Below are positions 1,602 through 19,271 of a stretch of 64,000 nucleotides of DNA, piece by piece. The translations under genes and the position numbers were made by a program. The first letter of the stretch is position 1. Each line of letters begins with the position of its first letter. The notes below the pieces were generated by a model that was not told the origin of the DNA, did no database searches, and was given only the letters and a program-made list of their open reading frames with translations. Origin of the DNA: Octopus sinensis (taxonomy: Eukaryota); the NCBI RefSeq assembly GCF_006345805.1, contig NC_043001.1:42842001-42906000 (forward strand), read 5' to 3'.

Positions 1602-1798
1602 TTAGGGTTCAAGGATAGCTTTAACACATTTTCCACTGAAGATAGTCTTGAATGCTTCTTCAAATTCTCTCATTGGAAACTTATGTGTAACCAGTGGCTT
1701 AACATCAACTTGACCACTAAACACCAACATTTCACAGCATTCCCAAGTATGGAATATACGTCTACCATGTACTGTTTTTAGAGTCAAAGATTTAAAAA
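1602..1798 (-). CDS. TDH: TDH coding exon 6, terminal (V-FKSLTLKTVHGRRIFHTW...THKFPMREFEEAF...GKCVKAILEP*)
   Basis: cattttcag acceptor, TAA stop at 1604-1602. C-terminus resembles bacterial Tdh (VFKGLTIQGITGRKMFxTW...THxF...GxCGKVIL). Total CDS 1062 nt = 353 aa + stop. Confidence 0.92.
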
Positions 1799-1968
1799 CT
1801 GAAAATGAAAATTTAGAAAAAGCTAATTTTATTTATAATATTTGCAAATTCAAATTGTAATAAAAATAATTATTTAAATAAAAAAAATACAATACAAAAT
1901 TGGTAAAGTGTTAAGTGTCCATAGCCTTGCAGATTCACTCTCAAATACTGGTGAGATTGATGCCATTT

Positions 1969-2250
1969 CATCATCATCATCATCATCATCGTTTAACGTC
2001 TGTTTTCCATGCTAGCATGGGTTGGACGGTTCAACTGGGGTCTGGGAAGCCAGAAGGCTGTGCCAGGCCCAGTCTGATCTGGCAGTGTTTCTACAGCTGG
2101 GTGCCCTTCCTAACGCCAACCACTCCGTGAGTGTAGTGGGTGCTTTTTATGTGCCACCTGCACAGGTGCCAGACGAGGCTGGCAAACGGCCATGATCGGA
2201 TGGTGCATTTTATGTGCCACCGGCACGGAGGCCAGTTGGGGCGCTGGCAG
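1969..2250 (-). mobile_element. RTE LINE 3'-terminal fragment with (GAT)n tail
   Basis: Matches the 3' module of the RTE at 32784-35480 and the copy at 46150-46555. Confidence 0.85.
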
Positions 2251-2254
2251 TTTT

Positions 2255-3560
2255 ACTTAAACTGTTGCAAGCTGATACTTGCAAGGGAGAAATTCTAGAG
2301 AGCCAATGTTCTGGAGGTTAAGGACTAGCAAATGTAGAAAAGTTAGAGAGAAGACAGTACACCTGTTGATCAGAAGCTGGAGCATGTCTGATAGTGATTT
2401 TAGGCCAATCATTCAAGTGTCCTTTCTCCGAATACAGTCATGAATATTTGTGTAACAGCAGCACCTTTCTGTTGTGGGCATCAATTGAGCTTTGTAGAGT
2501 GTCAGCAACAGTTGGAAACTGAAGTATTTTTGATCATGAAGAGAATGGTCAGTCTTTGGGATGTTGTTCTAGCTAAGGATGTACTTCTCATAGAGAAAAT
2601 CCTTGGTGATAGTGAGACCTAATATGTGGAGCAATCATGAAAGCTCTAGTTGAGTGCTACCCATGTTTGAGAGAAGATGTAACAATGATTTACATAATAT
2701 GAATGTTTTTTTCTTTTATTTTTTTCTTCTATTGTAAGAGATAAGATGGGCATAGTCCCTTGGAAAATGCTGTGGAGGTCTCCATTCATAGAGTTAGTGT
2801 AAGTTTCACATGTGGGGTTTTGGGTTGCATGTCAATGATGTATTGGGAAGTGTTAAGGAGGAATGAAGGGTTATATCATCTGCATAAGAACAGGTGTTAT
2901 TAGATGTGGTGGTACACAAGAGTTGATTGAATGTGGAACAGAACTCTGTCAATATACTGTGGTGGTGCAATCTGAAGGTGTTCATGGATGTGAAATTTCA
3001 GCAGAGGATCCACATAGCAGACAGTCAAAAGTTTTGTTGATGTTTAAGATAAGAATATTACTTCCATTGAATTTTTCTAAATGGGAGCTCCATTGGGAAA
3101 CATGGAAGAGTAGGTTTCCAGTGAATCTTTTAGCACTGCAGATGTTATACTGGTACTAGTTTAAAAGAGAGATTCAAGATGTAAGAACTTCACTGTTAAT
3201 GGCTGTCTCTATTATGTTTGAAATACTGCAAGTGCAATAGCTGAAAGAATCAGTGGAGTTATCTTTCTTGGGAATGGGACATACTGTAATCTGTTTCTAA
3301 AGATCAGAGTGTATACCTACTGTGAGAGAGTGAGACTGAAGAGCTTGGTGAATATAAGGGGCAAAATCTAGAGCATTGTCATTGCTGCTACTACAGTGAC
3401 CTCTGCTCCGCAGAGTTGGCTGGCCTTTAATCACTTCCACCCAGATATCCCTCACTTCCATATATATCATTCATATTGTGTTCATCTTCACAGGTTTCAC
3501 ACTGTACTCCTTCCTCAGAACATTGGTTCTCTTGAATTTCTTCCTTGCTAATATTTTTCC
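2255..3560 (-). mobile_element. Degenerate L2/CR1-group LINE reverse transcriptase fossil
   Basis: Broken minus-strand frames read PIPKKD, ADDITLHSS, ILGLTITKD and KKYFS..LLTLYKAQL. Confidence 0.65.
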
Positions 3561-3714
3561 TGCAACTATCAACATTTCTAAAGCAATTAATACTACTGGT
3601 CTTGGAGGAACAAGGAAGATATGGACACGTTTTTTATCTCAAGACTAATCCAATACAAATGAAATAGACTAGTTTGGTGTCGATTATAAAATATCTTCTA
3701 TTTTATCATTTTTC

Positions 3715-3764
3715 ACTCATTTCAGTCATTGGACTGCAGCCAAGCCAAAGCTTTGTGTACACGC

Positions 3765-3814
<50 letters not shown>

Positions 3815-3922
3815 GCTTTGGTTGACCTGGAGTTATAGTAGAAGACATTAGCACAGTGGGACTGAACCCAAGATCTCATGGTTAGGAAGCAAGCTTCTTA
3901 ACTACGCAGCCATGCCTGTACC
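3715..3922 (-). mobile_element. tRNA-derived SINE (family A), degenerate, with (CA)n
   Basis: Similar to 54497-54895. Confidence 0.7.
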
Positions 3923-3965
3923 TGTTGTGAAAAAATTAAAATTAGTGAGAAACATTATCACTTGC

Positions 3966-4134
3966 CTATGTCTCGAGTGGCATTTTCAATGTGGATTGGT
4001 TCTTTTGGCAAACCTACCATGACAACATGACCACCCTTTCTGAGCATGCCAAACATGGAATTCACCATAATTGGTGAACCAGTGCATTCACAAATTCGGT
4101 TAATACCATCATCATTTGTTAAATTCATAATGAA
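3966..4134 (-). CDS. TDH: TDH coding exon 5 (FIMNLTNDDG...ECTGSP...GLPKEPIHIENATRDI)
   Basis: tgtttcag acceptor. Donor is AG/GCAAGT (GC donor). 169 nt, phases 0/1. Confidence 0.9.
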
Positions 4135-5039
4135 CTGAAACAACAGAAATGACATTCACTTGTAAAATTGTCATACTAATCTTTGTCTATTTTACAATTT
4201 ACATCTGTATCACTGAAATGGAAGTAAACCATATAAAGCTTATGAAACAAGTTATTTTCATAATTTTGTTCTAAAAGTCCCTGTTTGTTTTCAATTTTTG
4301 TTTCATATGTTCTAATTAATGTAAAACTTTCTCTTTATAAGTCCCAAGTTTGGTTTTTATATTTATTTGAATATAACACAAATGTATATGATACACATAT
4401 AATACAAAACCACAATAAAATACAAATCCCAAACCATAGGAAACACAAACAAGAGCAAAAAATGAAAGAAAAAGAGGAAGAAAGGGGAGAAAAAGCATCA
4501 ATTCAACAGCAAATGCCTCAATTTGTTGCACACCACAAGGTTCAACAGAATCTACTGAAGCCAGTCAACATGCTCGTGGCATTACCACAGATGATGGTGA
4601 GTCTAAGGCGTTGTAACAGCCAAGTACCTTCACAGGCATCACCTGACACCTCAGTAAGGTAAGCTGCCAATGATAAAAAGAACTTTGTTGTTAGTGGCCC
4701 AACCCCTCCAAAAATCTCAAACACCACTGGCTAGAAGAAAAGGGTCACTGACAAGTCCTGGTATGAAAAAATTGGGAATGTGTTTCCTATATATGATGCA
4801 TGGATGCTAAGAAAATATGTCTTGTGTATCAACGGGATGATTTCAATTTCTAGCTAATGCCATTCACTTCATTTGTGCTACTAACACTTTTTAGGAAGGC
4901 ATAAATTTTATCATTCTTTATTTCCTCTCCCTTTCAAAATAATGGATCATTATGCCAAGTCATAAGACACCAATATTTATCAAACACAGTTGTAAAAATT
5001 GGACTGAATTAGTTGCATTTTTGTAATCAGAAATGTCCA

Positions 5040-5269
5040 TGGTGATAGGTACAAGAAAAACTGTGTAGTGAAAAAGTTACTTTACAACCATGTAGTTTCA
5101 GGTTCAATCCCATTCTGTGGTACATTGGGTAAGTGTCTTTTACTATAACCTTAGAACCTTAGGCTGATTGATACCTTGTAAAGTGAATTTGGCAGACAAA
5201 AGCTATACAAAGTCCATTGTATACAAACATATAAACAGATACACACACGTGTGTGTGTGCATGTGTGTT

Positions 5270-5339
<70 letters not shown>

Positions 5340-5470
5340 TGTGCATGCGTGCATGTGTGTGTTTGCAAATTCTTAAATTCTGAAACTGTTTGAAAAGTCA
5401 CTGAGCTATGCAGATATTCTGTTGTCATTTTCCTATTAGTAAATCATTCAGTTTCTCTGTGCTTTAAACA
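5040..5470 (+). mobile_element. tRNA-derived SINE (family A), degenerate, with internal (TG)n
   Basis: Box B-like GGTTCAATCC and family body. Confidence 0.6.
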
Positions 5471-6392
5471 CTGAGTGGAATTAAAATTTCCTCACTTGAA
5501 AAACAGGTAAGGATTGGAGAGCAAGAAAGTCATTTGGCTGTAAAACAATGTTTTATTAGTGTTCATCTAACCCATGCTAGCATGGTAAAACAGACATAAA
5601 ATGATCAAATAAATTAATGAACCCATTATCTGTATTTTCTTTCTAGCTTTGAATAACAGAGCTGAAACTCTCAAACAGCAAAAAATTTCAAACATTAATA
5701 TCTGATAATCATTCCTAGTGAGAAATTCATAAAATAGCATAAACTTTTTCCTCTTTAAAACTAAAAAATACTTCAGCTTAAACACTTATGAAACTCAAGC
5801 AAGATCCACAAAAGACTACTACTTTCATGTTTGGAAAGATGTTGCTAAATTGCAGACCTACAAGTTTCCCAGATTTCATCAAAAGGAAAGTCATCTAGTT
5901 CAATGGTAATGGCTCACCAATAGACAGCAACCTCTTGTACATAGAACTTGCTAGTTGCATATTACTTTCACCAGAGCACACAAATCTTTCCCCATCTTAT
6001 CACCTGTTCTGTGTCTCTCCTTCTACAACTCAAACTAGCTACTCTGCTTCATCTTTGCTCCTCAGAATGTCAATTCCAGGATTCTTTTTCCACCCTGTTT
6101 TTCCTGCACACTTTGACTTGCAGCTTCTTAAGCTGAACATCAGCCAATCAGTATAGAATTTCAACAGCTTCAGAGGGTCCCTTCCTCCCAACAAAATCTT
6201 TAACAAGAGAAAGAGCAAGAGAGAGAAATTGCATTTTCTATATTAGCTCATTGTTATAACTTCACTCAGTAAAGACTTTTTAGGTGTTTTTTATTATTAT
6301 TATATAACCTGATTTCTCAATTCTGAAGTTCTCTTACTTCATGCCACAGGAATTTGAAATATCTGAGTCTAAATATAAAGTAAAACACTAAC

Positions 6393-6489
6393 ATTTTTGA
6401 GATCCTGGTTTGAAGAGTTGACAATTACATCTGCTCCCATCTTTTTTGCTAGTTGTAAACGTTCATCTACTATATCTGTACAGATAACT
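6393..6489 (-). CDS. TDH: TDH coding exon 4 (R-VICTDIVDERLQLAKKMGADVIVNSSNQDLKN)
   Basis: Not in the ORF track; found by reading the minus strand. ttttcag acceptor, GTTAGT donor. 97 nt, phases 2/0. Carries the NAD-specifying Asp and the RLxLAKxMGA motif. Confidence 0.92.
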
Positions 6490-6904
6490 CTGAAAATAAA
6501 AATCAATATTTACAGAATTTTATTTACAAAATAAAATCAATGTTTATTTTTACCTGTTTGTAAGTTAAATGTAAACTTGTCTCCAAACACAAGTGCACCA
6601 TGTGGAATACTGATTTTCACTGTACACCATTGTAATTTTACCGTTTCATATTTTTTCTGGATTCAGTATTGCTAACACAGAGTTAGAGAGATGAGCTTCA
6701 AGATGGCTTTCCAACATACTAGAAATTGCTATCAAATAACACCCCACTGTCTCACATAATGTAGTTCTAGGGACTCCTAAAAAAAACTAGATGGTCATGA
6801 CCATATGCTTTGATCATTGGTCTACTTGATCAGTGTTGAATGGGGCTAAAGAGTAATAGCCACTAATATCCTCAAAATTCAAATAATTATCATTTCTTAC
6901 ACAA

Positions 6905-6992
6905 ATGTGTGTGTGTGTGCATGAGCGTGATTGTGTGTGTGTGTGCATGAGCGTGATTGTGTGTGTGTGCATGAGCGTGATTGTGTGTGTGT
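6905..6992. repeat. Short tandem repeat (GTGTGT..GCATGAGCGTGATT) x3
   Basis: Direct reading. Confidence 0.85.
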
Positions 6993-7546
6993 TAAGAAAT
7001 TTAGCAGTTGAGTGCTTTTCAACTGCCAAAGCAGTATATGGAGAGAAAAGAGAAAGAGAGGATGATGAATGATTAAGGGGAAAATGTTAAAATCTAGAAG
7101 AAACTATAAAAGACATTGTTGATATGGATAGCATGGGCATAGACAGTATTTTCTTAAAGAAGTTTCTTATAAATGGGTCCACTGCTAGCCATCCAATTTG
7201 TGAGAAACACACATTTATGATACATGTTAGGTAATAATTATAAATAGATTGGACTTGGTAGAGGAAAGATGTTTTTTTCCAATCTTGTTAATGCTGTTGC
7301 ATCCAAGCTATATATGTTGGAAGATAAAACATAACAGTTCTAGCTATTGTGAGCAATAAATGAACAAAGATATTTGATGTTTTGAAGCAAACATTGAGAT
7401 GTATCTATTAGAAATGTTGCAAATTATCAATAGTTAGATATAATACTTGTGGTAATCTGAAAGACACAATTACAGTTGCTTTAGTATGAGGTGATGTAAA
7501 ATCTGTAGGTATTAGGTATAGATACAATATAAATTATGATAATATA

Positions 7547-8306
7547 TAATTATGAAGACAAAAATATTAATATGATAGTAAGCAATTACAAGGGAAAATT
7601 CATAAAATTAATTTCTGTAATCTTTCCATTAAAGTATCAATCAAATATTAAGCCATTAAAGGCTAATGAAATAAGATAGATAAATGCACATACACACATA
7701 CACACACATGAACACACAAACACACACACTAAATAGTAATTCCATGGAAAAATGGGAGCATGAAAAGTAATAATCTTAAGATTATAAACCTGGAAAAGTA
7801 CAGGATAAGTTATTACACCCGTAAAAGTATAGGACAAGCTATTACTTCTAGTGAAGTAAAGAATAAGAAACTTTTTACTTAAAATATTGCAGCAAAGAAT
7901 GCCAGTTCTTCTAATTTATCACTCCTTACAGTTCTCATCTTTTAAATTTATTATACAAAACTGTTCAGTTAATTTGTAAGTTTGTCTAATTATTAATTTT
8001 TTTCTGTATTTAAGGTAGTAAATTAGCCAAATTCTACTTAAATAAGTATAGTGTTATTTGTAAACTATAATAAAATAAGTTTTAATATTCAAATTTTAAT
8101 TTTAGCTGCAATATTGAGTAAAAAGTTTACTTAAAAGCAATATTTTAAGTAAAAAGTTTACTTTACTAGAAGTAATAGCTTGTCCTATACTTTTCCAGGT
8201 GTAATAACTTGTCCTGTACCTTTCCAGGTTTATAATCTTAAGATTCTTACTTTTCAAGCTCCAATTTTTCTATGTAATTACTATATAGTGTGTGTGTCTG
8301 TGTGTT

Positions 8307-8378
<72 letters not shown>

Positions 8379-8525
8379 CCACGTGCATTTATCTATCTTA
8401 TTTCATTAGTCTTTAAAGTCTTAATATTTGATTGATACTTTAATAGAAAGATTACAGAAATTAATTTTATGTATTTTCCCTTGTAATTGCTTGCTATCAT
8501 ATTAATATTTTTGTCTTCAAAATTA
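7547..8525. repeat. Long inverted repeat / fold-back (arms about 7547-7893 and 8105-8525)
   Basis: The arms are reverse complements over about 350 bp; the right arm has an expanded (TG)n. Confidence 0.9.
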
Positions 8526-9361
8526 CTTATAGCATTTCATTTCTGCATTTTTCCATGTAATCTATGATGTTTTCAGGCATTACTGTTATAAGATAATGTG
8601 TCAATTAATAATTTAAGATACTGAAAGATAATATTTCAATTTTTCCATGTAAGTGATGATAATATTTTAATTCTTTTCATGTTTAATTTAAATATATGTT
8701 GTGATTGAATTATCTGACATTACCCATCCACATCAAATTAATGGCAAGGAATTTTACCATCTTGTTGGTTGCACCATGGCTCACCAAAAGTTACAAACAA
8801 GACCCCAAAACCATCAGTTACCAGGCTCACCTTAAGTAAACTAAATTTTAAGTTGGTGATAATAGCACTGACTGCTGCTAATCTAGATCTTTCAATAATT
8901 ATTCAATACAACTGTAATTATAAAAGCATACCAGATATACACAAGTTAAAATTACCTACATCCCATTAATATAAATTTGATCTATGAAAAATCCCTTTTA
9001 ATTAATTTTGAAATTTAAAAATTAAATTTAGAATATAAGCACTTTTAACCAATGCCTTTTCTGGACAGCCTTACTACAATGCCTTCATGTCTGTCCATAG
9101 AGACACAGCCAAAAATGACTATATTCCTGCCTCAATAAATTCAGATGCACATATCTGAAGCATATAACACACTAATGAACTAGCCCGATTAAATAATTAA
9201 CAAAAAAGAAACGGAAAGCAACTAAAAAGGAAAAGCAAAAAAAACAGAAAGCATGTTAATTAAAGCTGAAAGAGAAAATTGATAATAAAAGTTAAACTTA
9301 CTCTAATTCAACAGCATATTAAAAATAACTTTATTAAATACTTAATTAAAAAAATAAAGTA

Positions 9362-10430: not shown

Positions 10431-11695
10431 TTAGTTCATCAAGTATGAAATTTGTAGAAAAGAAAAAAGTTTGCTCATGTTTTATAAATACAAGGAATAG
10501 TTTTATTCATCAAAGTATGCACCTATATTGTCAATACACTTTTGCTATTTTAGCAGAAGCTGGTCCAGCCCGGAACTGTAAAAGCCTGGCAATCTAGAGT
10601 CAATGAAATCTTGGAAGGCCTGTTTTACAGCATCATCGGAATTAAATTTTTTTCCTATCAAAAAGTTATCCAAATTTTGGAAGAAGTGGTAGTTAGTGGG
10701 GGCAAGATCAAGTGAGTATGGTGGATGATGGAGAACTTTCAACTCCAAATCTTGTAGTTTTGCCAATGTCCTTTTTGCAATGTGTGGTCTGGTGTTGTCT
10801 TGCAATAAAATAAGAGTGGATCTGTTGACTAATCTAAGCTGTTTTTTTGTAAGTTTCTGCATCATTTGGTTCAGTTGGCTGCAGTATACTTTGGCCATGA
10901 TTAATGAGCCAGGTTTAAGGAAATTATAATGAATCACACCTGTGCCAGACCACCAAACACACACCATCAGCTTCTTTTGATGAGTTTTGCTTTTTGGACT
11001 GTGTTTTGGTGGTTTGTCTTTGTCCAACCATTGTGCTGAACGTTTACAGTTGTTGTATTGGATGTTACAGTTCAATTCATCACATGTTACAGTTCAATTA
11101 AAAAATGATTCATTTTTGTGATGAGAAAGTAGCATGATGCAAGCTTCCAAGCGTTGCTGTTTCTAATTTTCATTAAGTTCATGTGGAACCCACTTATCCA
11201 ACTTTTTCACTTTGAACTAGATGGGTCAATATTGTTTGCTTGCTAACACCAAACAGCAATAATTCACAGGTACTTTGAGATATGTCTGACTTGATGGTGG
11301 CTTTCAGTGTGTCATAATCCACCTTTGTTTCTGGTTGACTGCATTGCTCATTTGTGAGATCAAATTTTGCAAACCAATTTGATACTGTCTGTTGTGTAAT
11401 AATATTAGAATGAAATACTCCATTAATATTCTGAGTGGTCTGTGATGCTGTATTTCCAAGAAAGAACTCATATTTCAAAACTGTACAAATTTCCGACTTA
11501 TCCATCTCTAAACAAAAATAGCAAAAAGTGATTTATAAATACTTTATAAAGCACAAAATGAGTTAGAATAAAGAAATAGATGTGTAAGCTTTCTAACAAA
11601 AGGTAAAGATTATCAAAATATAATAATGGCGCAAAATGAGCAGCTGTCAAAGTTTACCATATACCTTACGACAAATTTCATACTTGATGACCTAA
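10431..11695 (-). mobile_element. Full-length mariner (DD34D) transposon, inactivated
   Basis: 27-bp TIRs (TTAGKTCATCAAGTATGAAATTTGTMG) with flanking TA on both sides; 1265 bp. ORF pieces 11194-11505 (HTH) and 10545-11075 (QDNTRPH, YSLDLAPTNY). Confidence 0.95.
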
Positions 11696-12030
11696 TAAAA
11701 GGAAGCATATACTGGGTGAGAATGCATAAGAAATATAGACTATAAATCTTAGTGCAAAATTTATTTCTGTTTGATTAAATCAATCAACTATTTGGTGGGG
11801 TTTTTTTTGCCTTTTTTTTTTTGCAAAACATGGGGAGGAGCCATTTATAAAAGATCATTCAGTGAAAGGGTGCACTGAGCTACAAAAGGTTGAGGACTAA
11901 TGCACTATGTGAATACAATATTTTCATTAGTTCTCCTATCACAAACTAGATTATGAAGTTCACCAGGGCTGAAATGTATAAAAGAATAAGAGTTTTTAAG
12001 CAAACAAAAATAAGATAATTTTATATTTAC

Positions 12031-12317
12031 ATATATTGGTCTTTAAACAGTATAAATATTTTGAAGGTACAATGCTGTATTGGGAGCATCCTCCATAAAT
12101 TGTTTTGTTTCCATGACCATATTGCCCCATGTTCTTACAGATACCTTGTAACCCATGTTTACATTGGTAGCAGTGACCACAAAAAAAATGGTTCTCTACA
12201 GTGACACGTTGGCCTATGATGACTGTGGATGATGGACCACATTTCACTACAGTACCAGCACATTCATGACCTGGAGTAAATGGAATGTTAGCTATGATTT
12301 TTGCAATTTCATTCCAC
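12031..12317 (-). CDS. TDH: TDH coding exon 2 (WNEIAK...GHE...CGHCYQCKHGLQGIC...KTNI)
   Basis: GHE motif and structural-Zn C-x2-C-x2-C-x7-C. ttctttag acceptor, GTAAAT donor. 287 nt, phases 2/1. Confidence 0.93.
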
Positions 12318-13279
12318 CTAAAGAAATAAAAAAAAATAAATGAATAAATAAAATTATACATTGTCTACTGAATATAAAATAGCTTCATTTGTTATATTTA
12401 TAAAAATATATCTTAAAAATTCTGATTAAACAGTTTAATGGTACAAATACCACCAGCACAGTAACACATCACCTCTGTAATCATCACCAATGTTTTAGAC
12501 AAAATTATTGTACCTCATCTCTTCTGTAAAGCTTGGCATCCTCAGATATGTTCCAACAACTTCCTTTTGCATTTCTTTTGTTTTGCTCAGCCAAAGATAC
12601 AGTCTATCCTCATTTGATATGTATTTCACCACTTTATGAATAATCTATTGCCCTTACATATACAAACATAGCTATTTCTCCTGCACACACGTAATTTTGC
12701 TGATGTCCAACATTCTTGTAAATAGCCATTGGATACCCAAAAATTCATATGCAATTTATTACTTTCCAATTGCTGCTGATCTTCCACATTTACTATATAT
12801 ATATCTTCCTGTCACATAGAATTATGCTTCTTATGAACGTATTATGAGGGAGAGGAGAGGAATCTATTTGGATTTTTGACAAACAAAATATTTTTTTTTT
12901 TCATAAATAAAGAAAAATTTTGTCATTGCTATGAACTACAAAACATGGAGAGAGTTAGAATGATATCGTTCATAGTGTGATTGCAGAAGCTGTTATCATT
13001 TGTTATTGTTTAGCTGCTGTTTACTTTGTCTGCTTTCTAGTCTCTGATATCTGCTAATACTCTCTATCAAGTAGCTAAGGTATGCTGAATTTATAGTGCT
13101 AGATAGGCTGAGAGAGAAAAGCATAAAAAGATGGAATTGTTGCTGGAGCCAGTTCAATGCGAAGTCATGATTGGTTAAATTTTCTTATCATGCTGGTAAT
13201 ATTCTAGTTAATCATGACATCAGGTTGAGTATTCCTGCTACAAACACACTGTAAAATCTTTTTGTATAAGAAAGAAACG

Positions 13280-14260
13280 TTTTATTACCAAAAATGATAG
13301 TTGTTTTCTGAACATTGCCTGCTTTGTTTCAGCAGATTTAAACCATTTCCAGCATAAATAATATCTTCCATATAACAGAACCTAATTCCAATACCAGCAA
13401 ATCATATCAAGAAATCATGATCTTCAGAACTGGCTTCTCATGCTGCTACCAACTCCAAAATTTAGGTTTCCTATTGCAGCTTTCGTGTATCAATTGTTTT
13501 CACAGACTCTCTATCCTGAAAAATGTTTGACAATTTCTCATGCTTTATTCTTATCAATCCTTCTGCCTTTTGACTGTACCTCCTGCCTCAGAATTTTTTG
13601 AACTGATTTCAACCCCGCAATATCTGAAAAACTATCACCAGTGAAGTAAATGATGCTTTTTGAGCATTGTTCAGCATTGTTCAGTCTGCAAGGTCTTCCA
13701 TTTATCAAATTGCAGCAGATCTTACTGGTCTTCACCAATGGGATCCCACCAACTTTACAGATTTTCATTTCCACCCTATTTCAACCAGCAGCAGTCCCAC
13801 AAAGTTTCCATGTTTTACAGCTCACTTTGCTTCCAACTTCACACTGCAAACACATACATACATACATGAGATGGTACTGCTCTGTTTCACATACTCATAA
13901 TCTTATACTGAATCTGAAATAAGGTCCTTCTATTGATTGTGAAGATTTAGTTACTAACATGCTACAACTACTGGCTCACAGACATGGTGCTTCTTTCCTC
14001 TTCTTCCCTTACTACTACTACAATCTCTTCTATTTATATGAACTTGCTATCTGTTTACTTTCACTACCTAAGCTCACTCATTCTGTCTCTTGTTACATTT
14101 AACGTGCCACAGATCTTGTACTAAATGCTTCATTCAATACTCTTTCCAGGACAATGATTCTACTGAATTTCTAACAGCCTTACATTTCCTATGGATACTG
14201 CCATTATAGGTGTTGAAACTGAACATCTTAAATACCAATTTTATCAGTCTTGGAGGACTT
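13280..14260 (+). mobile_element. Highly degenerate, internally deleted LINE (same group as 2255-3560)
   Basis: Endonuclease-like and C-terminal (LQLLAHR..., FPRT) remnants in broken frames. Confidence 0.45.
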
Positions 14261-14329
14261 GCAAAAGTTGTGGTCACTGATCATCTTCTTCTAGCTAAAT
14301 TATTAAAAGTGAGCCATCAAGGAAGTCTC

Positions 14330-14775
14330 TACATGATTGTTTGACCTACTAGAAATATCATTCATGAGAAATTCTTTAAATTTCCTAGACATTCTATGTA
14401 TGGTGTTTCTGTTCCTACTTGGTTAATGCAAGGACCTGACAAAGTGTTTGTTAAATAACATGTATGCAATAAGTATGATCCGTTAGTAGATGAAGCCCAA
14501 TTGGTACAAATTAACCCTAACCATGGATGTGAAAGTACTGTGTCCATTAGAGATTTAGTTCCTACTGGTAAAACGACCGAGGAGTATCAGTCAAGTAAGG
14601 ATCAAACTGATGTTGCTGACACTGATCCTATTCAAGTGCATGAACACCATGGTGGTTTTTCAGATACCATGATTGATTCTGTCCCACCTACACCAGCTTA
14701 AGAACCAGAACCTCAGACTACTTTGCACTGGCATTCATTCAGAACAAAAAAAGTTCCTGATAGGTTAAATTTATG
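14330..14775 (+). mobile_element. Ty3/Gypsy integrase C-terminal fragment, possibly followed by an LTR remnant
   Basis: SVPTWLMQGP...KYDPLVDEAQLVQINP...ESTVSIRDLVP...KKVPDRLNL, typical of the Gypsy integrase tail. Confidence 0.75.
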
Positions 14776-15004
14776 ATTGATGATGTGTAATGCTTATGAA
14801 TGCCTCATTATTACATTGTGATTGGCTCATGGTTATGTTTGTATTTTGCATTTTGTTGGCTAATTGTTCTTTTTTGTGTGTGTGTGGGGGGGTGTTGTGA
14901 TTTTCGTTTTGATCATGTGACTTTGATTGTCTCGATTGCTGTTATTTGCCTGCAGTTCAACTGTGCAGAGTATTGTTCTGTTTGCGGCACATGTTCAGTG
15001 TTAG

Positions 15005-15057
15005 TTTTTAACAACAACAACAACAGCAACAGCAGCAGCAATAACAACAACATCAAC

Positions 15058-15102
<45 letters not shown>

Positions 15103-15150
15103 TAATAATGATAATAATAATAATAATAATGATAATAATAATAATGTAGA
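15005..15150. repeat. (AAC)n/(AGC)n/(AAT)n microsatellite
   Basis: Direct reading. Confidence 0.95.
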
Positions 15151-15464
15151 AATAATATTTATGATACAGTTAAAACTCACAAATCACTGTAAATCCCAAA
15201 TCTCACAATTTGAAGATCATTCATGATATTCCCACACTTATAACATTGCCAAACTAGTATAATAAAGATTAAGATGTTTCTTCAGAGTCAGGAGATACTT
15301 CAGCCCTGTGCTCTTCAAAACTGAAACAACTGACATTAATAACAATAAAATTAATATTGTAACTGTAAAAACCTAAATGAAAAAATATGAAGATTTGTTG
15401 AATCACCTCTTTCAAAGAAATACAAGAGAGGTGATTTAGTAAATTTTCGCTCAATCATGATTGA

Positions 15465-16000
15465 AAACCATATGTTGAATGAAGTGAAATGTTTCTTATA
15501 TCTAAGAAGCATTATATCTGTAACTGGAAGTGTAGAGGAGGACATTGAAATGAGAACTGGAAGAGTAAATCATGTCCTTTAAAATCATAAAGCATATTTG
15601 GAAGGCAAAGGTTCTGTCCAAACTTATTAAACTGAGAATTTTCTTTAGTAGCATCAAATCTGTTCTGCTATATGATTCCAAAATATGGCAAATGAATGCA
15701 AATATCCCCTGAAAGCTCCAAACATTTGTGAACAGATGCCTAAGGAATATCTCAACCATTAAGATAGCCTGAAAGTGTGAACAACAAAAACCTTTGGACA
15801 AAATCAAGCAAAAATCTATTGGCTAACAAATAGCAAGATATAAGAGGAGAAGAGTAAGCCTTATATTAAAAAGACTAACGGGATATTTGGCAATTCCAGT
15901 TTTGGATTATAATCTCAAGGGTAAAAAGTATGCAGGACATCAATGTTCAAATACAGGAGAAATATCATGAAAAATAAATGGAAGCTTAACACATTGGAAG
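15465..16000 (+). mobile_element. Old RTE-clade LINE RT C-terminal fossil
   Basis: NEVKCFLYLRSII...KLRIFFSSIKSVLLY...KLQTFVNRCLRNI. Confidence 0.7.
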
Positions 16001-16184
16001 TTGCATTTCAAAAAAATATTTTCAATTACCTTTTCCAATATCTAATCTATAGGGAATTTCAAATTCTGCCAAGAGAGCATAAATAAGGCTTTGTGTTTTG
16101 AATGGCAATGAGAAATATAGAATGTTCAGACATCTTTATACAGTCAGAAGATAAATTAATCATAGCCTATATAATGTTTTTTCG

Positions 16185-17872
16185 TTCGTTTTTACTATAA
16201 TCCATATCTACTATGCAATTTACACCAGCAATGCTACAACGCCACCTTAAGAATAAACGCAACTATACCTCTCCTGGTCTCGATGGTGTTACATACCTAC
16301 TTCTCAAATGCAGTTGGTACTTTCTTCTAAGCCAACTTTCTCTATTCTTCCAATTCTGTCTTGACAATGGTGTTACTCCAGAACAGTGGAAAACTGCCAG
16401 TGTTATCCCTCTGTTCAAAAAAGGTGACTGCACATCGCCTGTCAACTATCGCCCCGTTAGTCTTACTAGCTGCATCGCCAAACTGATGGAATCCTGTATC
16501 AGAGAAACCCTCTGGAAATCTCACAGCCTCATCCAGCCGTCACAATTCGGATTTATTCCTAACTCCAGCTGCTGTAATCAACTCATCGAGTTTCTTGAGG
16601 ACATTACCCAAATCACTGATCGCGGATCCTGGGTGGATGTTGTTTACCTGGACTTTGCTAAGGCTTTTAACTCTGTGCCACACAAAAGACTTATGGTGAA
16701 GCTTTCTGCGTTGGGCGTAAGAGACGAACTCTATAACTGGTTGAAGTCCTTTATTTTTGGCTGAAAAGAGGTTGTCACAGTTCTAGGACAGCACTCTTCG
16801 CCCTATGAGATGACATCTGGTGTACCACAGGGATCTGTTCTTGGCCCCCTTTTATTTGTTGCATATGTTAATGACATAGATGCCAACTTAAAGAATGCCA
16901 CAGTGCTGAAATATGCAGATGACATCAAGCTGTACCTCGAAATAAAGAGGTCAGATCCTGTACACTATAGATCTATATTGCAAGCAGACCTGGACACAAT
17001 GCAGCAGTGGATCATGGACTGGCAACTCAAGCTGGCTGTGGACAAATGTACCACCATGCATTTTGGGAGGAGAAACCCAGCGTCCACCTACTCCCTCCAC
17101 AACACCAGTCTCAAAAAGTCTTCATGTGAACGTGACCTGGGTGTTATTGTCAACAGTGATTTGCGTTGGACAAAACATATCGCTAAAATTGTCAAGAAGG
17201 CTGAGGGTGTCTTGGCATCACTCACCAAATCCTTTGTGAGCCGCTCTCCGACTATCTATCTGCGGCTTTATATAGCTATGGTAAGACCTCACCTGGAATT
17301 TGCATCACTGGTCTGCAACCCCTATCTTGCCCAGGATATCAATCGTCTGGAAGCCGTTCAGTGACGTGCAACCAAAAGAATACCCTCCATCAGGCATTTG
17401 CCATATTCTGAACGCCTTACTTCCCTGGGCATGGACACATTGAAACTCCGACGTCTGGCAGCTGACTTGGCAGACATCCATAAAATTATCAACCATCGTA
17501 CAAACAATAACTCTGAGCACCTTTTCAAACTCCACCCATCTAACACCTGTGGACATATTTACAAAGTCAGAAAACAGCACAGCTCCCATGACTTCAGGAA
17601 ATATTTTTTCATGCTGAGAGTTGCTGAAGCATGGAACAAACTGCCGGCATCAGTTGTTAGTTGTCGGAGCACTGCATCCTTCAAAACTTCCATACTTTCT
17701 GAGATTCGCCAACACTACACCTGATTTTCTCCCCTCCATACACACACAAGCATGTATGTGACTTATGCATTGTTCGCTTTCCAGACATTTGTACATTACT
17801 GCATATACTCTGACAAGTTGTGGTGCACCTGAGCACTGTGTACAATAATTTCATCATTATTATTATTATACA
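16185..17872 (+). mobile_element. 5'-truncated CR1-type LINE (RT domain, 3' UTR, (ATT)n tail)
   Basis: ORFs 16213-16764, 16810-17364 and 17398-17724 share one frame. Motifs YRPVSLTS, QFGF, YLDFAKAF, GVPQGSVLGP, YADD. Confidence 0.95.
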
Positions 17873-17929
17873 AATTTGTATTATAATACAAATTTCAATA
17901 TAATACAAATTTGTGAAAGAATATCTCTT

Positions 17930-18300
17930 ATCTTTTACTTCTTTCAGTCATTGGATTGTGGCCGTGCTGGGGTATTGCCTTGAAGGGTTTAGTGGAACAA
18001 ATTGCTTCCAGTACTTATCTTTAAAGTTTGGTATTTATTCTATCAGTCTCATTTGCTGAACTACTAAATAACAAGATGTAAATACACCAAAACTGGTTGT
18101 CAAGGCACACACGCATACTCTCTCTCTCTCTCTCACACACACAACAGGTTTCTTTCAGTTTCTGTCTACCAAATCCATTTGCAAGGCATTGGTCAGCCCA
18201 GGGCTACAGTAGAAGACACTTGCTCAAGTTTTCCATGCAAGGGACAGAACCCAAGACCACATGATTGGGAAGCAAGCCTCTTATCACAGTCAAGCTTGTA
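17930..18300 (-). mobile_element. tRNA-derived SINE (family A)
   Basis: Similar to 54497-54895. Confidence 0.75.
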
Positions 18301-18799
18301 CTTAATATGTAGAGAAGTTAAAATACTGAGCTGGCAGAATTGTTACCACACAAGGCAAAATGTTTATTGACAGTTCATCCATCTTTACATTCTCAGGTCA
18401 AATTCCACTGAGGTAGACTTTGCTTTCCATCCTTTTGGGGTTGATAAAATAAATAACAGTAGAGCACTAAGGTCACTGTAATTGACGTACTTGCACCCGC
18501 AAAATTGTTGGCCCTGTGCTAAAATTTAGAACCAATATGTGGAAAACTGTTGGGAAATTATGGATGAGGTCATAGAATTAATATAATTTTAGTATTTTCC
18601 TTTCTCTAAGTCCATAAAAATCCTCTCATGGAAAAATAATAATTTTCTTGTATTATTCCATTCCATTTTGATTTTGACTATCTTTCCAAAATACAGATTG
18701 TAATTTCTTTGATATTGAATATAAAATATGTTTGCTTGTGTGCATATGAATTTTGAACCCATGTGTTTATGCACATGTGAGTGTGTGTGCATGAATGCA

Positions 18800-18815
18800 T
18801 GTGTGTGTATGTATA

Positions 18816-18856
<41 letters not shown>

Positions 18857-18912
18857 TGTGTGTGTGTGTGGTGTGTGTGTGTGTGTGTGTGTGGTGTGTG
18901 TGTGTGTGTGTG
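18800..18912. repeat. (TG)n microsatellite; a (GAA)n lies nearby at 19030-19070
   Basis: Direct reading. Confidence 0.95.
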
Positions 18913-19041
18913 AACAGTGTTCCAAAGAATAGTAAAGATTCTAGTGTTGTTTGAAGATTCCACTGCAATTTGTAATGTTCCCCTAAATGTAAGATGATGC
19001 TCATGGCAAGAGCACTGATAATGGTGGCAAAGAAGAAGAAG

Positions 19042-19072
<31 letters not shown>

Positions 19073-19110
19073 TATATTGGTAAAATATTTTCATTTAAGC
19101 AAAAACTTAC

Positions 19111-19271
19111 TTATATAAATTGATATCTGATCCACATAGTGATACAACTTCAACTTTTATGAGTGCTTCGTCCCCAACAGGTTCTGGTAAATCTAAAGTT
19201 TTAAGTTCAAATGATTCTTTCTCAGATGTTTTCATGAGAGCTTCCATTTTGCGAGGAAGAGGGTCAGCCAT
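19111..19271 (-). CDS. TDH: Zn-dependent (MDR) L-threonine 3-dehydrogenase, coding exon 1 (MADPLPRKMEALMK...SLCGSDINLY-K)
   Basis: Manual translation from the ATG at 19271-19269. Contains the catalytic-Zn motif CGSD and a GTAAGT donor. Phase 2 joins exon 2 to give LYK/WNE, matching TDH 'HIYNWD'. Confidence 0.9.

What the first reader, a model, noticed from the sequence alone, without database searches (positions are those of the whole stretch)
1602..19271. Intact, six-exon bacterial/archaeal-type (Zn-MDR) threonine 3-dehydrogenase in an animal genome
Seen: the six exons splice with consistent phases into a 353-aa ORF. It retains the catalytic Zn ligands (C46, H71, E72), the structural Zn (C100/103/106/114), GxGxxG and the NAD-specifying Asp. 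Motifs LYKWN, VENHFFCG and VFKSLTLKTVHGRRIFHTW match prokaryotic Tdh rather than sorbitol dehydrogenase. Established: the characterised animal TDH is an unrelated SDR/GalE-like enzyme. Inference: this is a second, prokaryote-like route for threonine (or related amino-alcohol) oxidation, from an old horizontal transfer or patchy retention. Five spliceosomal introns full of host TEs argue against contamination.
Basis: partly seen in the sequence, partly recalled or inferred. Interest (0 to 1): 0.7.

Follow-up and report, generated by a model that had tools for sequence, protein, structure and literature searches.

The report
Octopus threonine-dehydrogenase-like gene, already known
This is a real, intact six-exon octopus gene for a zinc dehydrogenase that most resembles bacterial threonine dehydrogenase, but it belongs to an old family found across marine invertebrates that is already annotated and published, and its true substrate is still unproven.

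Summary
Six minus-strand exons (19271-1602) splice into a 1062-nt, 353-aa ORF. Intron 5 uses a GC-AG donor.

The protein is closest to prokaryotic MDR threonine dehydrogenases and clearly outside sorbitol dehydrogenase.

It is neither an octopus oddity nor new. It is 94% identical to the O. bimaculoides protein that NCBI names L-threonine 3-dehydrogenase. Relatives at 48-62% identity occur in molluscs, brachiopods, annelids, cnidarians, sponges, decapods, tunicates and Capsaspora. A 2026 paper (PMC13390645) already describes this metazoan MDR-type TDH family.

Three or four of the five octopus introns sit at the same positions in Lottia, Capitella and Lingula. This excludes contamination and recent transfer. 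No close prokaryotic donor was found.

The name "threonine dehydrogenase" is weaker than it looks:
- The clade scores about 300 bits against curated TDH models (cut-offs 380 and 458).
- It carries its own invariant signature at sites that distinguish MDR groups.
- Its nearest prokaryotic relatives lie outside the canonical E. coli/Pyrococcus group, and none of 80 loci had kbl nearby.

Verdict: a known, ordinary gene with an unresolved substrate and an odd intron history. Low interest.

The parts
19111..19271 (-). Exon 1 (161 nt). ATG at 19271-19269; encodes residues 1-54 (phase 2 end), including catalytic Cys46 and LYK of the LYKWN motif.
   Evidence: In-frame TAG/TAA 8-9 codons upstream. Same N-terminus in O. 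bimaculoides P0001.
12318..19110 (-). Intron 1 (6793 nt, GT-AG, phase 2). Seen only in the two octopus genomes among the taxa mapped. Contains a non-LTR reverse-transcriptase fragment at 16213-17364 (+).
   Evidence: position absent in Lottia, Capitella, Lingula. RVT_1 hits. Window 16.2-18.1 kb has no counterpart in O. bimaculoides.
12031..12317 (-). Exon 2 (287 nt). Residues 54-150: His71/Glu72, VENHFFCG, structural-zinc Cys100/103/106/114, and the clade-specific QYGHGNKT insertion.
10232..12030 (-). Intron 2 (1799 nt, GT-AG, phase 1). Position shared with Lottia, Capitella and three Lingula paralogues. Contains a Mos1/mariner remnant at 10545-11505 (-).
   Evidence: HTH_48 and Transposase_1 hits.
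10081..10231 (-). Exon 3 (151 nt). Residues 150-200: Glu158-Pro-Leu-Gly-Val162, His164, and GxGxxG (181-186).
6490..10080 (-). Intron 3 (3591 nt, GT-AG, phase 2). Position shared with Lottia, Capitella and Lingula.
6393..6489 (-). Exon 4 (97 nt). Residues 200-232, including the NAD-specifying Asp205.
4135..6392 (-). Intron 4 (2258 nt, GT-AG, phase 0). Position shared with Lottia and Capitella, but not Lingula.
3966..4134 (-). Exon 5 (169 nt). Residues 233-289.
1799..3965 (-). Intron 5 (2167 nt, GC-AG, phase 1; donor TAG|GCAAGT). Position shared with Lottia, Capitella and Lingula. The O. bimaculoides donor is TAC|GTAAGT.
1602..1798 (-). Exon 6 (197 nt). Residues 289-353 (VFKSLTLKTVHGRRIFHTW...) and the TAA stop at 1604-1602.

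Best explanation
The region holds the genuine, intact cephalopod orthologue of an old, eukaryote-specific (holozoan-wide) subfamily of zinc-containing medium-chain dehydrogenases. Its closest characterised relatives are the prokaryotic L-threonine 3-dehydrogenases.

Shown:
- The six-exon structure is real.
- The protein has both zinc sites, a Rossmann fold with an Asp that specifies NAD+ over NADP+, the His equivalent to E. coli His90 and the Arg equivalent to P. horikoshii Arg294.
- The gene is under purifying selection.
- It has been in the lophotrochozoan lineage since before molluscs, annelids and brachiopods diverged.

Inferred:
- It works as a homo-oligomeric NAD+-dependent dehydrogenase. 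A catalytic Zn (Cys46/His71/Glu72, with Glu158 nearby) polarises the hydroxyl of a small polar secondary alcohol, and hydride passes to NAD+.
- It has no N-terminal presequence, so it probably acts in the cytosol.
- L-threonine is the leading candidate substrate, at roughly 45%. In the cytosol, away from mitochondrial 2-amino-3-ketobutyrate CoA ligase, the product would decarboxylate to aminoacetone and could feed methylglyoxal and D-lactate. This route was reported biochemically for octopus arm muscle.
- The clade-invariant residues at the signature sites differ from characterised TDHs, so a related but different substrate is nearly as likely.

Its patchy presence among animals is best read as old presence plus repeated loss, not as a transfer into octopus.
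For: - Gene model and motifs.
- Family assignment: TDH equivalog models are the best hits at 302 and 294 bits, against 192 for the next family. Pfam finds ADH_N and ADH_zinc_N. Solved TDHs give E = 1e-65 over the full length, against 142 bits for SORD. An AlphaFold model of the 94%-identical orthologue has pLDDT 90.6, and the five solved TDHs are the top five Foldseek hits at TM 0.87-0.92.
- Orthologues: 94% identity to O. bimaculoides "L-threonine 3-dehydrogenase", and 298/301 aligned residues identical to an O. vulgaris model. Identity is 48-62% across eight animal groups plus Capsaspora.
- Clade: eukaryotic sequences group at 74% bootstrap, and at 99% with P0123, whose contig neighbour is a eukaryote-type Peptidase_S28.
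- Age: introns 2, 3 and 5 are at identical positions and phases in Lottia, Capitella and three Lingula genes. Intron 4 is shared with Lottia and Capitella.
- Synteny: collinear with O. bimaculoides, including the SelS neighbour.
- Selection: dN/dS = 0.32, with fewer non-synonymous changes than neutral expectation (Fisher p = 0.0014).
- No donor: an exhaustive HMMER scan gives 47% identity or less outside the animal cluster, and 41% or less for prokaryote-like sequences. The motif [VI][CAG][VC]ENH[FY][YF]C was not seen in any of the 80 loci kept from a scan of 185,579 prokaryotic species genomes.
- No presequence: the N-terminus aligns with residue 1 of E. coli Tdh at Met9, and stop codons lie upstream.
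- Literature: the metazoan MDR-type TDH family and the octopus threonine-to-D-lactate work are both cited in PMC13390645.
Against: - Threonine specificity is not supported beyond best-hit similarity. All tested holozoan members score 288-325 bits, below the curated cut-offs of 380 and 458. E. coli and P. horikoshii TDH score 484-648.
- Asn152 (E. coli) / Asn157 (B. licheniformis), described as a direct substrate contact, is Val162 in 37 of 37 holozoans.
- Thr94 (B. licheniformis) corresponds to Asn96, and Gly285 (E. coli numbering) to Thr297.
- His122, His164 and His299 plus a 3-residue insertion are clade-specific.
- By score the octopus orthologue is nearer to non-canonical prokaryotic groups with V/I/T at position 162 (221-282 bits) than to the first Asn-type representative (214 bits).
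- Those groups showed no kbl-like gene within 5 kb in 0 of 80 metagenome loci. In several loci they sit beside 2-oxoacid/acetoin-type E1/E2/E3 genes, a GalE-like epimerase or sugar-type genes.
- dN/dS of 0.32 is only moderate constraint and rests on about 41 substitutions.
- No transcript evidence for this species was available, and intron 5 relies on a GC donor.
- Deep vertical descent is not shown. Cnidarian/sponge, lophotrochozoan, decapod and tunicate genes share no intron positions, and the NJ backbone is unresolved.
Confidence: 0.8

Rival explanations
1. The enzyme is not a threonine dehydrogenase. The holozoan clade has its own conserved specificity for another small alcohol or diol, such as 2,3-butanediol/acetoin, 1-amino-2-propanol or a hydroxy acid. 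The TDH name is an annotation carried over from the nearest well-populated family.
For: - Scores fall below both curated TDH cut-offs, while both characterised yardsticks pass easily.
- The signature NHHVHTHR is invariant, against [STG]HxNVGxR in the canonical clade.
- The nearest prokaryotic groups lack kbl (0 of 80) and often sit next to acetoin-type E1/E2/E3 dehydrogenase genes or sugar genes.
Against: - TDH is still the best-matching characterised family by about 110 bits, and gives the top five structural matches.
- His97 and Arg301, which are important in E. coli and Pyrococcus TDH, are invariant.
- Solved (R,R)-butanediol dehydrogenase scores only 98 bits.
- Octopus tissue reportedly converts threonine to D-lactate (cited in PMC13390645).
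Confidence: 0.4
2. The family entered eukaryotes by a single very old transfer from a bacterium into a stem holozoan or earlier eukaryote, and has been inherited and repeatedly lost since. This concerns the deep origin only and is compatible with the main explanation.
For: - The family's closest relatives are overwhelmingly prokaryotic. The 2010 MDR census listed TDH (MDR014) as 97.7% bacterial, 2.0% archaeal and 0.3% eukaryotic.
- The eukaryotic clade is embedded among prokaryotic TDH-like groups in the NJ tree.
- A choanoflagellate TDH was earlier scored as bacterial-derived.
Against: - No donor lineage is identifiable; prokaryote-like sequences are at 41% identity or less.
- The backbone bootstrap is below 50%.
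- Other eukaryotes (MMETSP transcript P0122, P0121) fall in the same clade, so an ancestral eukaryotic gene is equally possible.
Confidence: 0.4
3. The bilaterian genes, including the octopus one, descend from intronless copies that replaced the ancestral intron-rich metazoan gene and later regained introns. These copies arose by retroposition or by animal-to-animal transfer, as PMC13390645 proposes for tunicates.
For: - Actinia and Amphimedon share 9-11 exact intron positions.
- None of these is shared with the lophotrochozoan set (3-4 shared among four taxa), the eight Homarus positions, or intronless Styela.
- Near misses are no more frequent than chance.
Against: - Only eight species were sampled.
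- The protein tree is roughly species-like, though weakly supported.
- Complete intron turnover without retroposition cannot be excluded.
Confidence: 0.3
4. In this particular species the gene is decaying or mis-spliced. The T-to-C change at the intron 5 donor forces use of an upstream cryptic GT, as in the 301-aa O. vulgaris model that lacks 52 residues, giving a non-functional protein.
For: - The window has a GC donor where O. bimaculoides has GT.
- The O. vulgaris model P0003 skips residues 273-288 and 113-148, the latter including zinc ligand Cys114.
- dN/dS is 0.32.
Against: - TAG|GCAAGT matches the usual GC-donor consensus. The -1 base is G here and C in O. bimaculoides, which should improve U1 pairing (inference from general splicing knowledge).
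- All six exons are open, and every catalytic and structural residue is intact.
- Automated models avoid GC donors by default.
Confidence: 0.07
5. Bacterial contamination of the assembly, or a recent bacterium-to-octopus transfer.
For: Only the superficial best-hit similarity to prokaryotic Tdh.
Against: - Five spliceosomal introns, three or four of them shared across phyla.
- Host transposable elements inside the introns.
- 27 kb of collinearity with another octopus chromosome.
- 35% GC, typical of the surrounding window.
- No prokaryotic sequence above about 41% identity.
Confidence: 0.01
6. A divergent member of the animal sorbitol/polyol dehydrogenase family.
For: Same superfamily and a similar fold (TM 0.88 to SORD).
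Against: - SORD scores 142 bits against 222 for TDH.
- SORD and ketose reductase separate from all TDH-like sequences with 100% bootstrap.
- Human SORD lacks three of the four structural-zinc cysteines and has Pro-Gly where this protein has Asn96-His97.
Confidence: 0.01

Closest known systems
Metazoan MDR-type "L-threonine 3-dehydrogenase(-like)" genes, for example O. bimaculoides XP-annotated TDH (P0001) and Ciona KY21.Chr9.903 (PMC13390645)
   Same: Orthologous. It is 94% identical to O. bimaculoides, with identical exon structure and synteny. It carries the same invariant signature as sponge, cnidarian, crustacean and tunicate members. The phyletic distribution matches the one published.
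   Different: Only species-level differences: a GC instead of GT donor in intron 5, a lineage-specific LINE fragment in intron 1, and 21 amino-acid substitutions.
Prokaryotic MDR L-threonine 3-dehydrogenase (E. coli Tdh; P. horikoshii and T. kodakarensis TDH; NCBIfam NF003808/TIGR00692; EC 1.1.1.103)
   Same: Same fold, and the best sequence and structure matches. Both zinc sites, the NAD-type Rossmann motif with Asp, the His equivalent to E. coli His90, the Gly-Arg equivalent to Ph Gly293-Arg294, and the YxW[ND] and ETW-like motifs are shared.
   Different: - Identity is only about 33-40%, and scores are below both curated cut-offs.
- Asn becomes Val162, Thr/Gly becomes Asn96, and Gly becomes Thr297.
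- There are extra invariant His122, His164 and His299 and a 3-residue insertion.
- There is no kbl partner in cis, which is not expected in a eukaryote anyway.
- No biochemical characterisation of any clade member was found.
Uncharacterised prokaryotic "TDH-like" MDRs with Val/Ile/Thr at the Asn position (for example Aerophobetes, Planctomycetota and Priestia "zinc-dependent alcohol dehydrogenase")
   Same: These are the nearest non-eukaryotic sequences by score (221-282 bits) and tree position. They share Val162-type residues, His122 in several, and His299.
   Different: Identity is 34-41%. They lack Asn96, His164 and Thr297 and the insertion. They sit in operon contexts with an acetoin-type dehydrogenase complex, LarA plus epimerase, or sugar genes. 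These contexts say little directly about the animal enzyme.
Animal mitochondrial SDR-type (GalE-like) L-threonine dehydrogenase (mouse TDH; a human pseudogene)
   Same: Possibly the same reaction (EC 1.1.1.103).
   Different: An unrelated fold and family, based on established knowledge. It carries a mitochondrial presequence and is coupled to GCAT. The octopus MDR protein has no presequence.
Sorbitol dehydrogenase / polyol dehydrogenase family (human SORD 1pl6)
   Same: Same MDR superfamily, catalytic Cys/His/Glu, and NAD-dependent.
   Different: 80 bits lower than TDH. It forms a separate clade with 100% bootstrap. In the alignment human SORD has R99/D102/C105/S113 where this protein has its four structural-zinc cysteines.

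Membership tests
Zn-dependent medium-chain dehydrogenase/reductase (MDR) superfamily | GroES-like catalytic domain plus Rossmann coenzyme domain | tested here: met
   PF08240 at 83 bits (residues 34-143) and PF00107 at 107 bits (184-309). AlphaFold model of the 94%-identical orthologue has pLDDT 90.6 and TM 0.82-0.92 to many MDR structures.
Zn-dependent medium-chain dehydrogenase/reductase (MDR) superfamily | Catalytic zinc ligands Cys/His/Glu and a four-Cys structural zinc lobe | tested here: met
   C46, H71, E72 (plus E158), and C100/C103/C106/C114. All are invariant in 37 holozoan sequences.
MDR-type L-threonine 3-dehydrogenase (NCBIfam NF003808 / TIGR00692 equivalogs, EC 1.1.1.103) | Score at or above the curated equivalog cut-off | tested here: not met
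   302.2 bits against a cut-off of 380, and 293.8 against 458.35. Five other holozoan members score 288-325 bits. Yardsticks: E. coli Tdh 648/636 and P. horikoshii TDH 484/629.
MDR-type L-threonine 3-dehydrogenase (NCBIfam NF003808 / TIGR00692 equivalogs, EC 1.1.1.103) | Best-matching family over the full length, ahead of other MDR families | tested here: met
   TDH models lead the next family (IolM) by about 110 bits. The top five PDB hits by sequence and by fold are all TDHs.
MDR-type L-threonine 3-dehydrogenase (NCBIfam NF003808 / TIGR00692 equivalogs, EC 1.1.1.103) | His equivalent to E. coli His90 / B. licheniformis His95, and Gly-Arg equivalent to Bl Gly294 / Ph Arg294 | tested here: met
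   H97, G300 and R301 are invariant. Their importance is taken from PMC12276384.
MDR-type L-threonine 3-dehydrogenase (NCBIfam NF003808 / TIGR00692 equivalogs, EC 1.1.1.103) | Pocket Asn (E. coli N152 / Ph N156 / Bl N157) and Thr/Gly before the His (Bl T94) | tested here: not met
   V162 in 37 of 37 and N96 in 36 of 37 holozoans. Nearly all members of the tree group holding E. coli and P. horikoshii TDH have Asn at 162. The role of these residues comes from docking and mutagenesis in PMC12276384.
MDR-type L-threonine 3-dehydrogenase (NCBIfam NF003808 / TIGR00692 equivalogs, EC 1.1.1.103) | NAD+ rather than NADP+ preference (acidic residue at the end of beta-B) | tested here: met
   G181xG183xxG186 and D205, invariant. 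Preference is inferred from the sequence rule and was not assayed.
MDR-type L-threonine 3-dehydrogenase (NCBIfam NF003808 / TIGR00692 equivalogs, EC 1.1.1.103) | Functional coupling with 2-amino-3-ketobutyrate CoA ligase (tdh-kbl linkage in bacteria) | tested here: inconclusive
   Linkage is not expected in a eukaryote. In the nearest prokaryotic groups, 0 of 80 metagenome loci and 0 of 80 GTDB loci had a kbl-like gene within 5-6 kb. E. coli tdh-kbl adjacency served as the only positive control.
MDR-type L-threonine 3-dehydrogenase (NCBIfam NF003808 / TIGR00692 equivalogs, EC 1.1.1.103) | NAD+-dependent oxidation of L-threonine to 2-amino-3-ketobutyrate | not testable with these tools
   No characterised member of the animal clade was found in the literature searches. 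The octopus tissue work is known only through a citation.
Holozoan/metazoan MDR "TDH-like" clade (as in PMC13390645) | Groups with animal sequences to the exclusion of prokaryotic TDH, SORD and ADH | tested here: met
   NJ tree: the eukaryotic clade has 74% bootstrap, or 99% with P0123. Identity to members is 48-94%, against 41% or less to prokaryote-like sequences.
Holozoan/metazoan MDR "TDH-like" clade (as in PMC13390645) | Clade signature at positions 96/97/122/162/164/297/299/301 = NHHVHTHR, plus a G-[KRN]-[GK] insertion after His122 | tested here: met
   The window protein has the exact signature, as do nearly all of the 37 holozoans.
Holozoan/metazoan MDR "TDH-like" clade (as in PMC13390645) | Lophotrochozoan intron positions | tested here: met
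   Introns at CDS nt 448, 599 and 865 are shared with Lottia, Capitella and three Lingula genes. The intron at 696 is shared with Lottia and Capitella.
Sorbitol/polyol dehydrogenase family (PDH, MDR005) | Clusters with SORD and shares SORD-type residues at the signature positions | tested here: not met
   142 bits against 222 for TDH. SORD separates with 100% bootstrap. SORD has P95-G96, T121, F297 and Y299 where this protein has N96-H97, H122, H299 and R301.
SDR-type (GalE-like) animal TDH | Extended-SDR fold | tested here: not met
   There is no Epimerase/SDR Pfam hit, and the protein is MDR throughout. Whether octopus also has an SDR-type TDH gene was not tested.

The most novel reading that the evidence does not exclude
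The animal "TDH-like" clade may be a functionally distinct, never-characterised enzyme family whose invariant signature (Asn96, His122, Val162, His164, Thr297, His299 plus a 3-residue insertion) reflects its own substrate. Alternatively, it may be the unidentified cytosolic enzyme behind the reported threonine to aminoacetone to methylglyoxal to D-lactate flux in octopus muscle. In addition, the bilaterian copies may descend from intronless (retroposed or laterally moved) copies, which would explain why they share no intron positions with the sponge/cnidarian genes.
Probability: 0.3. Interest if true: 0.5.

Novelty: already known. Interest (0 to 1): 0.25.

Why it matters
As a discovery it matters little. 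The gene is annotated in sister species, and the family's presence in non-vertebrate animals is published.

What remains useful:
1. Databases carry "L-threonine 3-dehydrogenase" for a clade that fails the curated TDH thresholds and differs at sites that distinguish MDR groups. One enzymological study of any member (octopus, Lottia, Ciona or a coral) would settle the annotation of hundreds of invertebrate genes. It would also show whether many marine animals have a cytosolic threonine-to-aminoacetone route that vertebrates and insects appear to lack.
2. The mutually exclusive intron sets make this a small, clean case for studying retrogene replacement or intron turnover.
3. The O. vulgaris model that lacks 52 residues looks like an annotation error caused by a GC donor.

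Tried and rejected
- I could not read Akagi & Ohmori 2004. Searches on octopus D-lactate and threonine found only the citing paper.
- Two broad literature searches for functional work on invertebrate TDH returned only irrelevant marine-biology papers.
- The E. coli TDH paper gave no residue-level data.
- No genomic record was found for Capsaspora P0038, so its introns could not be mapped.
- The GTDB scan for prokaryotic carriers of the animal motifs returned only distant MDRs, picked up through the generic CGSDIxL[YW] pattern.
- A kbl search in 160 prokaryotic and metagenomic loci found nothing.
- I considered using a homologous-protein search to look for an octopus SDR-type TDH. I rejected it because the 120-row output for a vertebrate query would be filled by vertebrates.
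- I considered intron sliding to reconcile the intron sets. I rejected it because near-coincidences are at chance level.
- Fold search adds little discrimination, since all MDRs give TM above 0.8.
- Rejected explanations: SORD membership, contamination, and recent HGT.

Full report
**1. The observation**

Reading the minus strand between 19330 and 1560 shows six open segments with canonical splice signals. Joining 19271-19111, 12317-12031, 10231-10081, 6489-6393, 4134-3966 and 1798-1602 gives a 1062-nt CDS and a 353-aa protein ending in TAA. Introns 1-4 are GT-AG.

Intron 5 is GC-AG, with the donor TAG|GCAAGT. The next GT downstream would run into a stop after two codons of exon 6. Stop codons lie 8-9 codons upstream of the ATG.

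- C46/H71/E72, plus E158.
- C100/103/106/114.
- G181xGxxG186 and D205.
- The motifs LYKWN, VENHFFCG and VFKSLTLKTVHGRRIFHTW.

The introns carry a mariner/Mos1 remnant (intron 2) and a reverse-transcriptase fragment (intron 1). The only omission is the GC donor.

**2. Whose genome, and is the gene at home there?**

The protein is 94% identical to O. bimaculoides "L-threonine 3-dehydrogenase" (P0001). It is 298/301 identical over the aligned part of an O. vulgaris "L-threonine 3-dehydrogenase-like" model. The window therefore comes from O. vulgaris or a sibling species.

The O. bimaculoides gene lies on a 127-Mb chromosome between Selenoprotein S and ZPR1. BLASTN shows that locus to be collinear with window 910-28067 at 82-96% identity, covering all introns and the SelS side. 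All five intron positions and phases are identical.

dS is 0.085, similar to intron divergence. dN/dS is 0.32, with significantly fewer replacement changes than silent ones. This is a resident gene under moderate constraint, not contamination.

**3. What the protein is closest to**

- NCBIfam's two TDH equivalog models are the best hits (302 and 294 bits). The next family, scyllo-inosose 3-dehydrogenase, scores 192.
- Pfam sees the two MDR domains.
- Against solved structures, the five MDR-type TDHs lead at 194-222 bits. Human SORD scores 142 and (R,R)-butanediol dehydrogenase 98.
- An AlphaFold model of the orthologue (pLDDT 90.6) has the same five TDHs as its top Foldseek hits, at TM 0.87-0.92. 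All MDRs are close in fold, however.
- In an NJ tree of 167 sequences, SORD and ketose reductase split from everything else with 100% bootstrap.

**4. How widespread it is**

Among the 120 best hits, named sequences at 48-62% identity come from the following groups:
- Gastropods, bivalves and cephalopods.
- The brachiopod Lingula, with three genes.
- Annelids.
- Anthozoan, hydrozoan and scyphozoan cnidarians.
- Demosponge, calcareous and homoscleromorph sponges.
- Malacostracan crustaceans.
- Ascidians.
- The filasterean Capsaspora.

Many 1.1-1.3 kb Logan/JGI contigs that look like transcripts also match.

In the exhaustive 50%-clustered library, the whole animal family collapses into one representative. 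The next hits are a transcript-like 488-aa protein (47%), an MMETSP protist transcript (43%) and a metagenome protein (41%). The contig neighbour of that last protein is a eukaryote-type S28 carboxypeptidase. Bacterial sequences follow at 39% or less. These eukaryotic sequences form a clade at 74% bootstrap, or 99% including P0123.

I scanned 185,579 prokaryotic species genomes with two animal-clade motifs. None of the 80 loci kept carried the VENH[FY][FY]C motif. Every match came through the generic CGSDIxL[YW] motif and was 35% identical or less.

**5. It has been described**

PMC13390645 (Genome Biol Evol 2026) analyses the Ciona orthologue. [quoted passage not shown] It shows that the gene groups with bacterial TDH rather than animal SORD/ADH. 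It discusses ancestral presence against HGT. [quoted passage not shown]

A 2013 study listed a choanoflagellate TDH among bacterial-derived genes. The 2010 MDR census recorded the TDH family as 97.7% bacterial, 2.0% archaeal and 0.3% eukaryotic.

**6. Intron evidence on age**

I mapped exon structures exactly for twelve genes. Octopus introns 2, 3 and 5 (CDS nt 448, 599 and 865) are at the same codon and phase in Lottia, Capitella and all three Lingula paralogues. Intron 4 (nt 696) is shared with Lottia and Capitella. Intron 1 was seen only in the two octopus genomes. The gene therefore predates the split of molluscs, annelids and brachiopods.

Separately, Actinia (12 introns) and Amphimedon (11 and 9 introns) share 9-11 positions. 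The gene was therefore already intron-rich in the ancestor of sponges and cnidarians.

None of those positions is shared with the lophotrochozoan set, with the eight positions in Homarus, or with Styela, which is intronless. Near misses are at chance level. The cause is either complete intron turnover or descent of the bilaterian genes from intronless copies. I could not sample more taxa, so this stays unexplained (note).

**7. Is it really a threonine dehydrogenase?**

This is where the usual annotation is weakest.

- All six holozoan proteins tested score 288-325 bits on the TDH equivalog models, below the cut-offs of 380 and 458. Bacterial (E. coli) and archaeal (P. horikoshii) enzymes of proven function score 484-648.
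- Column-by-column comparison shows nine positions that are invariant or nearly so in 37 holozoans but rare (9% or less) in 124 prokaryote-like representatives.
  - Asn96 replaces the Thr/Gly before the catalytic-site His.
  - Gln119, His122 and a three-residue insertion follow the zinc lobe.
  - His164 and Thr297 are also among the nine.
- Val162 is invariant in the clade too. It replaces the Asn that docking and mutagenesis in B. licheniformis TDH place in direct contact with substrate. Val also occurs at this position in many non-canonical representatives.
- Three clade residues, Gln119, His122 and His299, align with human SORD Phe118, Thr121 and Phe297. From memory, those line the SORD substrate pocket. 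I did not verify this here.
- Laid out in tree order, E. coli and Pyrococcus TDH sit in a block with [STG]-H-x-N-V-G-x-R at the eight signature positions. The animal clade is N-H-H-V-H-T-H-R. The prokaryotic groups nearest to the animal clade have V, I or T in place of the Asn. By score these non-canonical groups (221-282 bits) also precede the first Asn-type representative (214 bits).
- I fetched 80 metagenome loci for those groups. None had a kbl-like gene within 5 kb. Several lie next to E1-alpha/E1-beta/E2 or E3 genes of a 2-oxoacid/acetoin-type dehydrogenase complex with an SDR. Others lie next to LarA-like and GalE-like genes, and one is in a sugar-type cluster. The only positive control for tdh-kbl linkage was E. 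coli.

On the other side:
- TDH remains the best-matching characterised family by a wide margin.
- His97 (E. coli His90) and Gly300-Arg301 are invariant.
- Octopus tissue is reported to use threonine.

I put L-threonine at about 45%, and a different small hydroxy substrate at about 40%.

**8. Mechanism proposed**

- Shown from sequence: a complete catalytic Zn site, a structural Zn lobe, and an NAD-type Rossmann fold.
- Inferred from family knowledge: Zn-polarised alcohol oxidation with hydride transfer to NAD+ in a homo-oligomer.
- Inferred from the N-terminus: cytosolic location. The N-terminus aligns with residue 1 of E. coli Tdh at Met9, stop codons lie upstream, and all orthologues are equally short.
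- If the substrate is threonine, a cytosolic enzyme separated from mitochondrial GCAT would yield 2-amino-3-ketobutyrate. That compound decarboxylates spontaneously to aminoacetone (established chemistry), which leads to methylglyoxal and D-lactate. This fits the title of the octopus study, but that work did not identify the enzyme.

**9. Verdict**

The finding is already known, and the gene is an ordinary resident of invertebrate genomes.

The residual points of interest are the unverified substrate, the discordant intron sets, and a probable mis-annotation in O. vulgaris caused by the GC donor.

Noticed in passing
window 3966/3965 (exon 5 / intron 5 boundary); P0003: The window has a GC donor (TAG|GCAAGT) where O. 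bimaculoides has TAC|GTAAGT. The public O. vulgaris model (P0003, 301 aa) avoids it by using an upstream in-frame GT, dropping residues 273-288. It also drops residues 113-148, including zinc ligand Cys114. This is probably an annotation artefact rather than biology.
   Followed up: partly
L003, L004, L005, L006, L007, L008, L012, L013 versus the window: Intron positions fall into mutually exclusive sets. Sponge and sea anemone share 9-11 positions, and mollusc, annelid and brachiopod share 3-4. Lobster has 8 private positions and the ascidian Styela has none. No position is shared between sets.
   Followed up: partly
L005 (Amphimedon) 3001-7257; L012 (Lingula) 8001-15563: Tandem duplicates of the TDH-like gene occur in a sponge and a brachiopod. 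Lingula has a third, more divergent copy on another scaffold (L013), with two extra introns and Ser96/Phe299 in the signature.
   Followed up: partly
window about 25.8-29.7 kb (+), e.g. 29377-29634: The upstream, head-to-head neighbour is Selenoprotein S, as in O. bimaculoides. An open segment at 29377-29634 encodes a transmembrane-like stretch (EYGWILLVVVILLIFAK...) that from memory resembles the SelS N-terminal region. Its exon structure was not worked out.
   Followed up: partly
window 16182-18147: About 2 kb in intron 1, including the RVT_1 ORFs, has no counterpart in O. bimaculoides. It is a lineage-specific LINE insertion here, or a deletion there. The middle of the intron 2 mariner (about 10658-11362) is likewise missing in O. 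bimaculoides.
   Followed up: no
window 30644-32362 (+) and 32882-34913 (+): There are more transposon-like ORFs outside the gene. One is a zinc-finger/transposase-like ORF series at 30.6-32.4 kb. The other is a 365-aa ORF whose translation looks like a non-LTR reverse transcriptase, followed by further ORFs at 32.9-34.9 kb. Not scanned against Pfam.
   Followed up: no
window 40.8-41.8 kb, 52.2-52.7 kb, 56.6-57.3 kb: Long, degenerate TA/CA-rich simple-sequence tracts read as ORFs of Y, I, C, V and M. They coincide with the lowest-GC stretches of the window.
   Followed up: no
L122, L149, L154, L156 (metagenome loci): Prokaryotic TDH-like MDR genes with Val or Thr at the canonical Asn position sit directly beside E1-alpha/E1-beta/E2 (or E3 plus TRAP transporter) genes of a 2-oxoacid/acetoin-type dehydrogenase complex, and beside an SDR in L156. 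This suggests butanediol/acetoin-type rather than threonine metabolism for those groups.
   Followed up: partly
L098, L102 (Aerophobetes-type loci): The MDR gene that sources label "L-threonine 3-dehydrogenase" is followed by a GalE-like extended-SDR gene. In L102 it is also preceded by a LarA-like gene. No kbl gene is nearby.
   Followed up: no
L007 (Styela clava) 3001-4050: The ascidian orthologue is a single uninterrupted exon. This is consistent with the retroposition or transfer scenario discussed for tunicates in PMC13390645.
   Followed up: no
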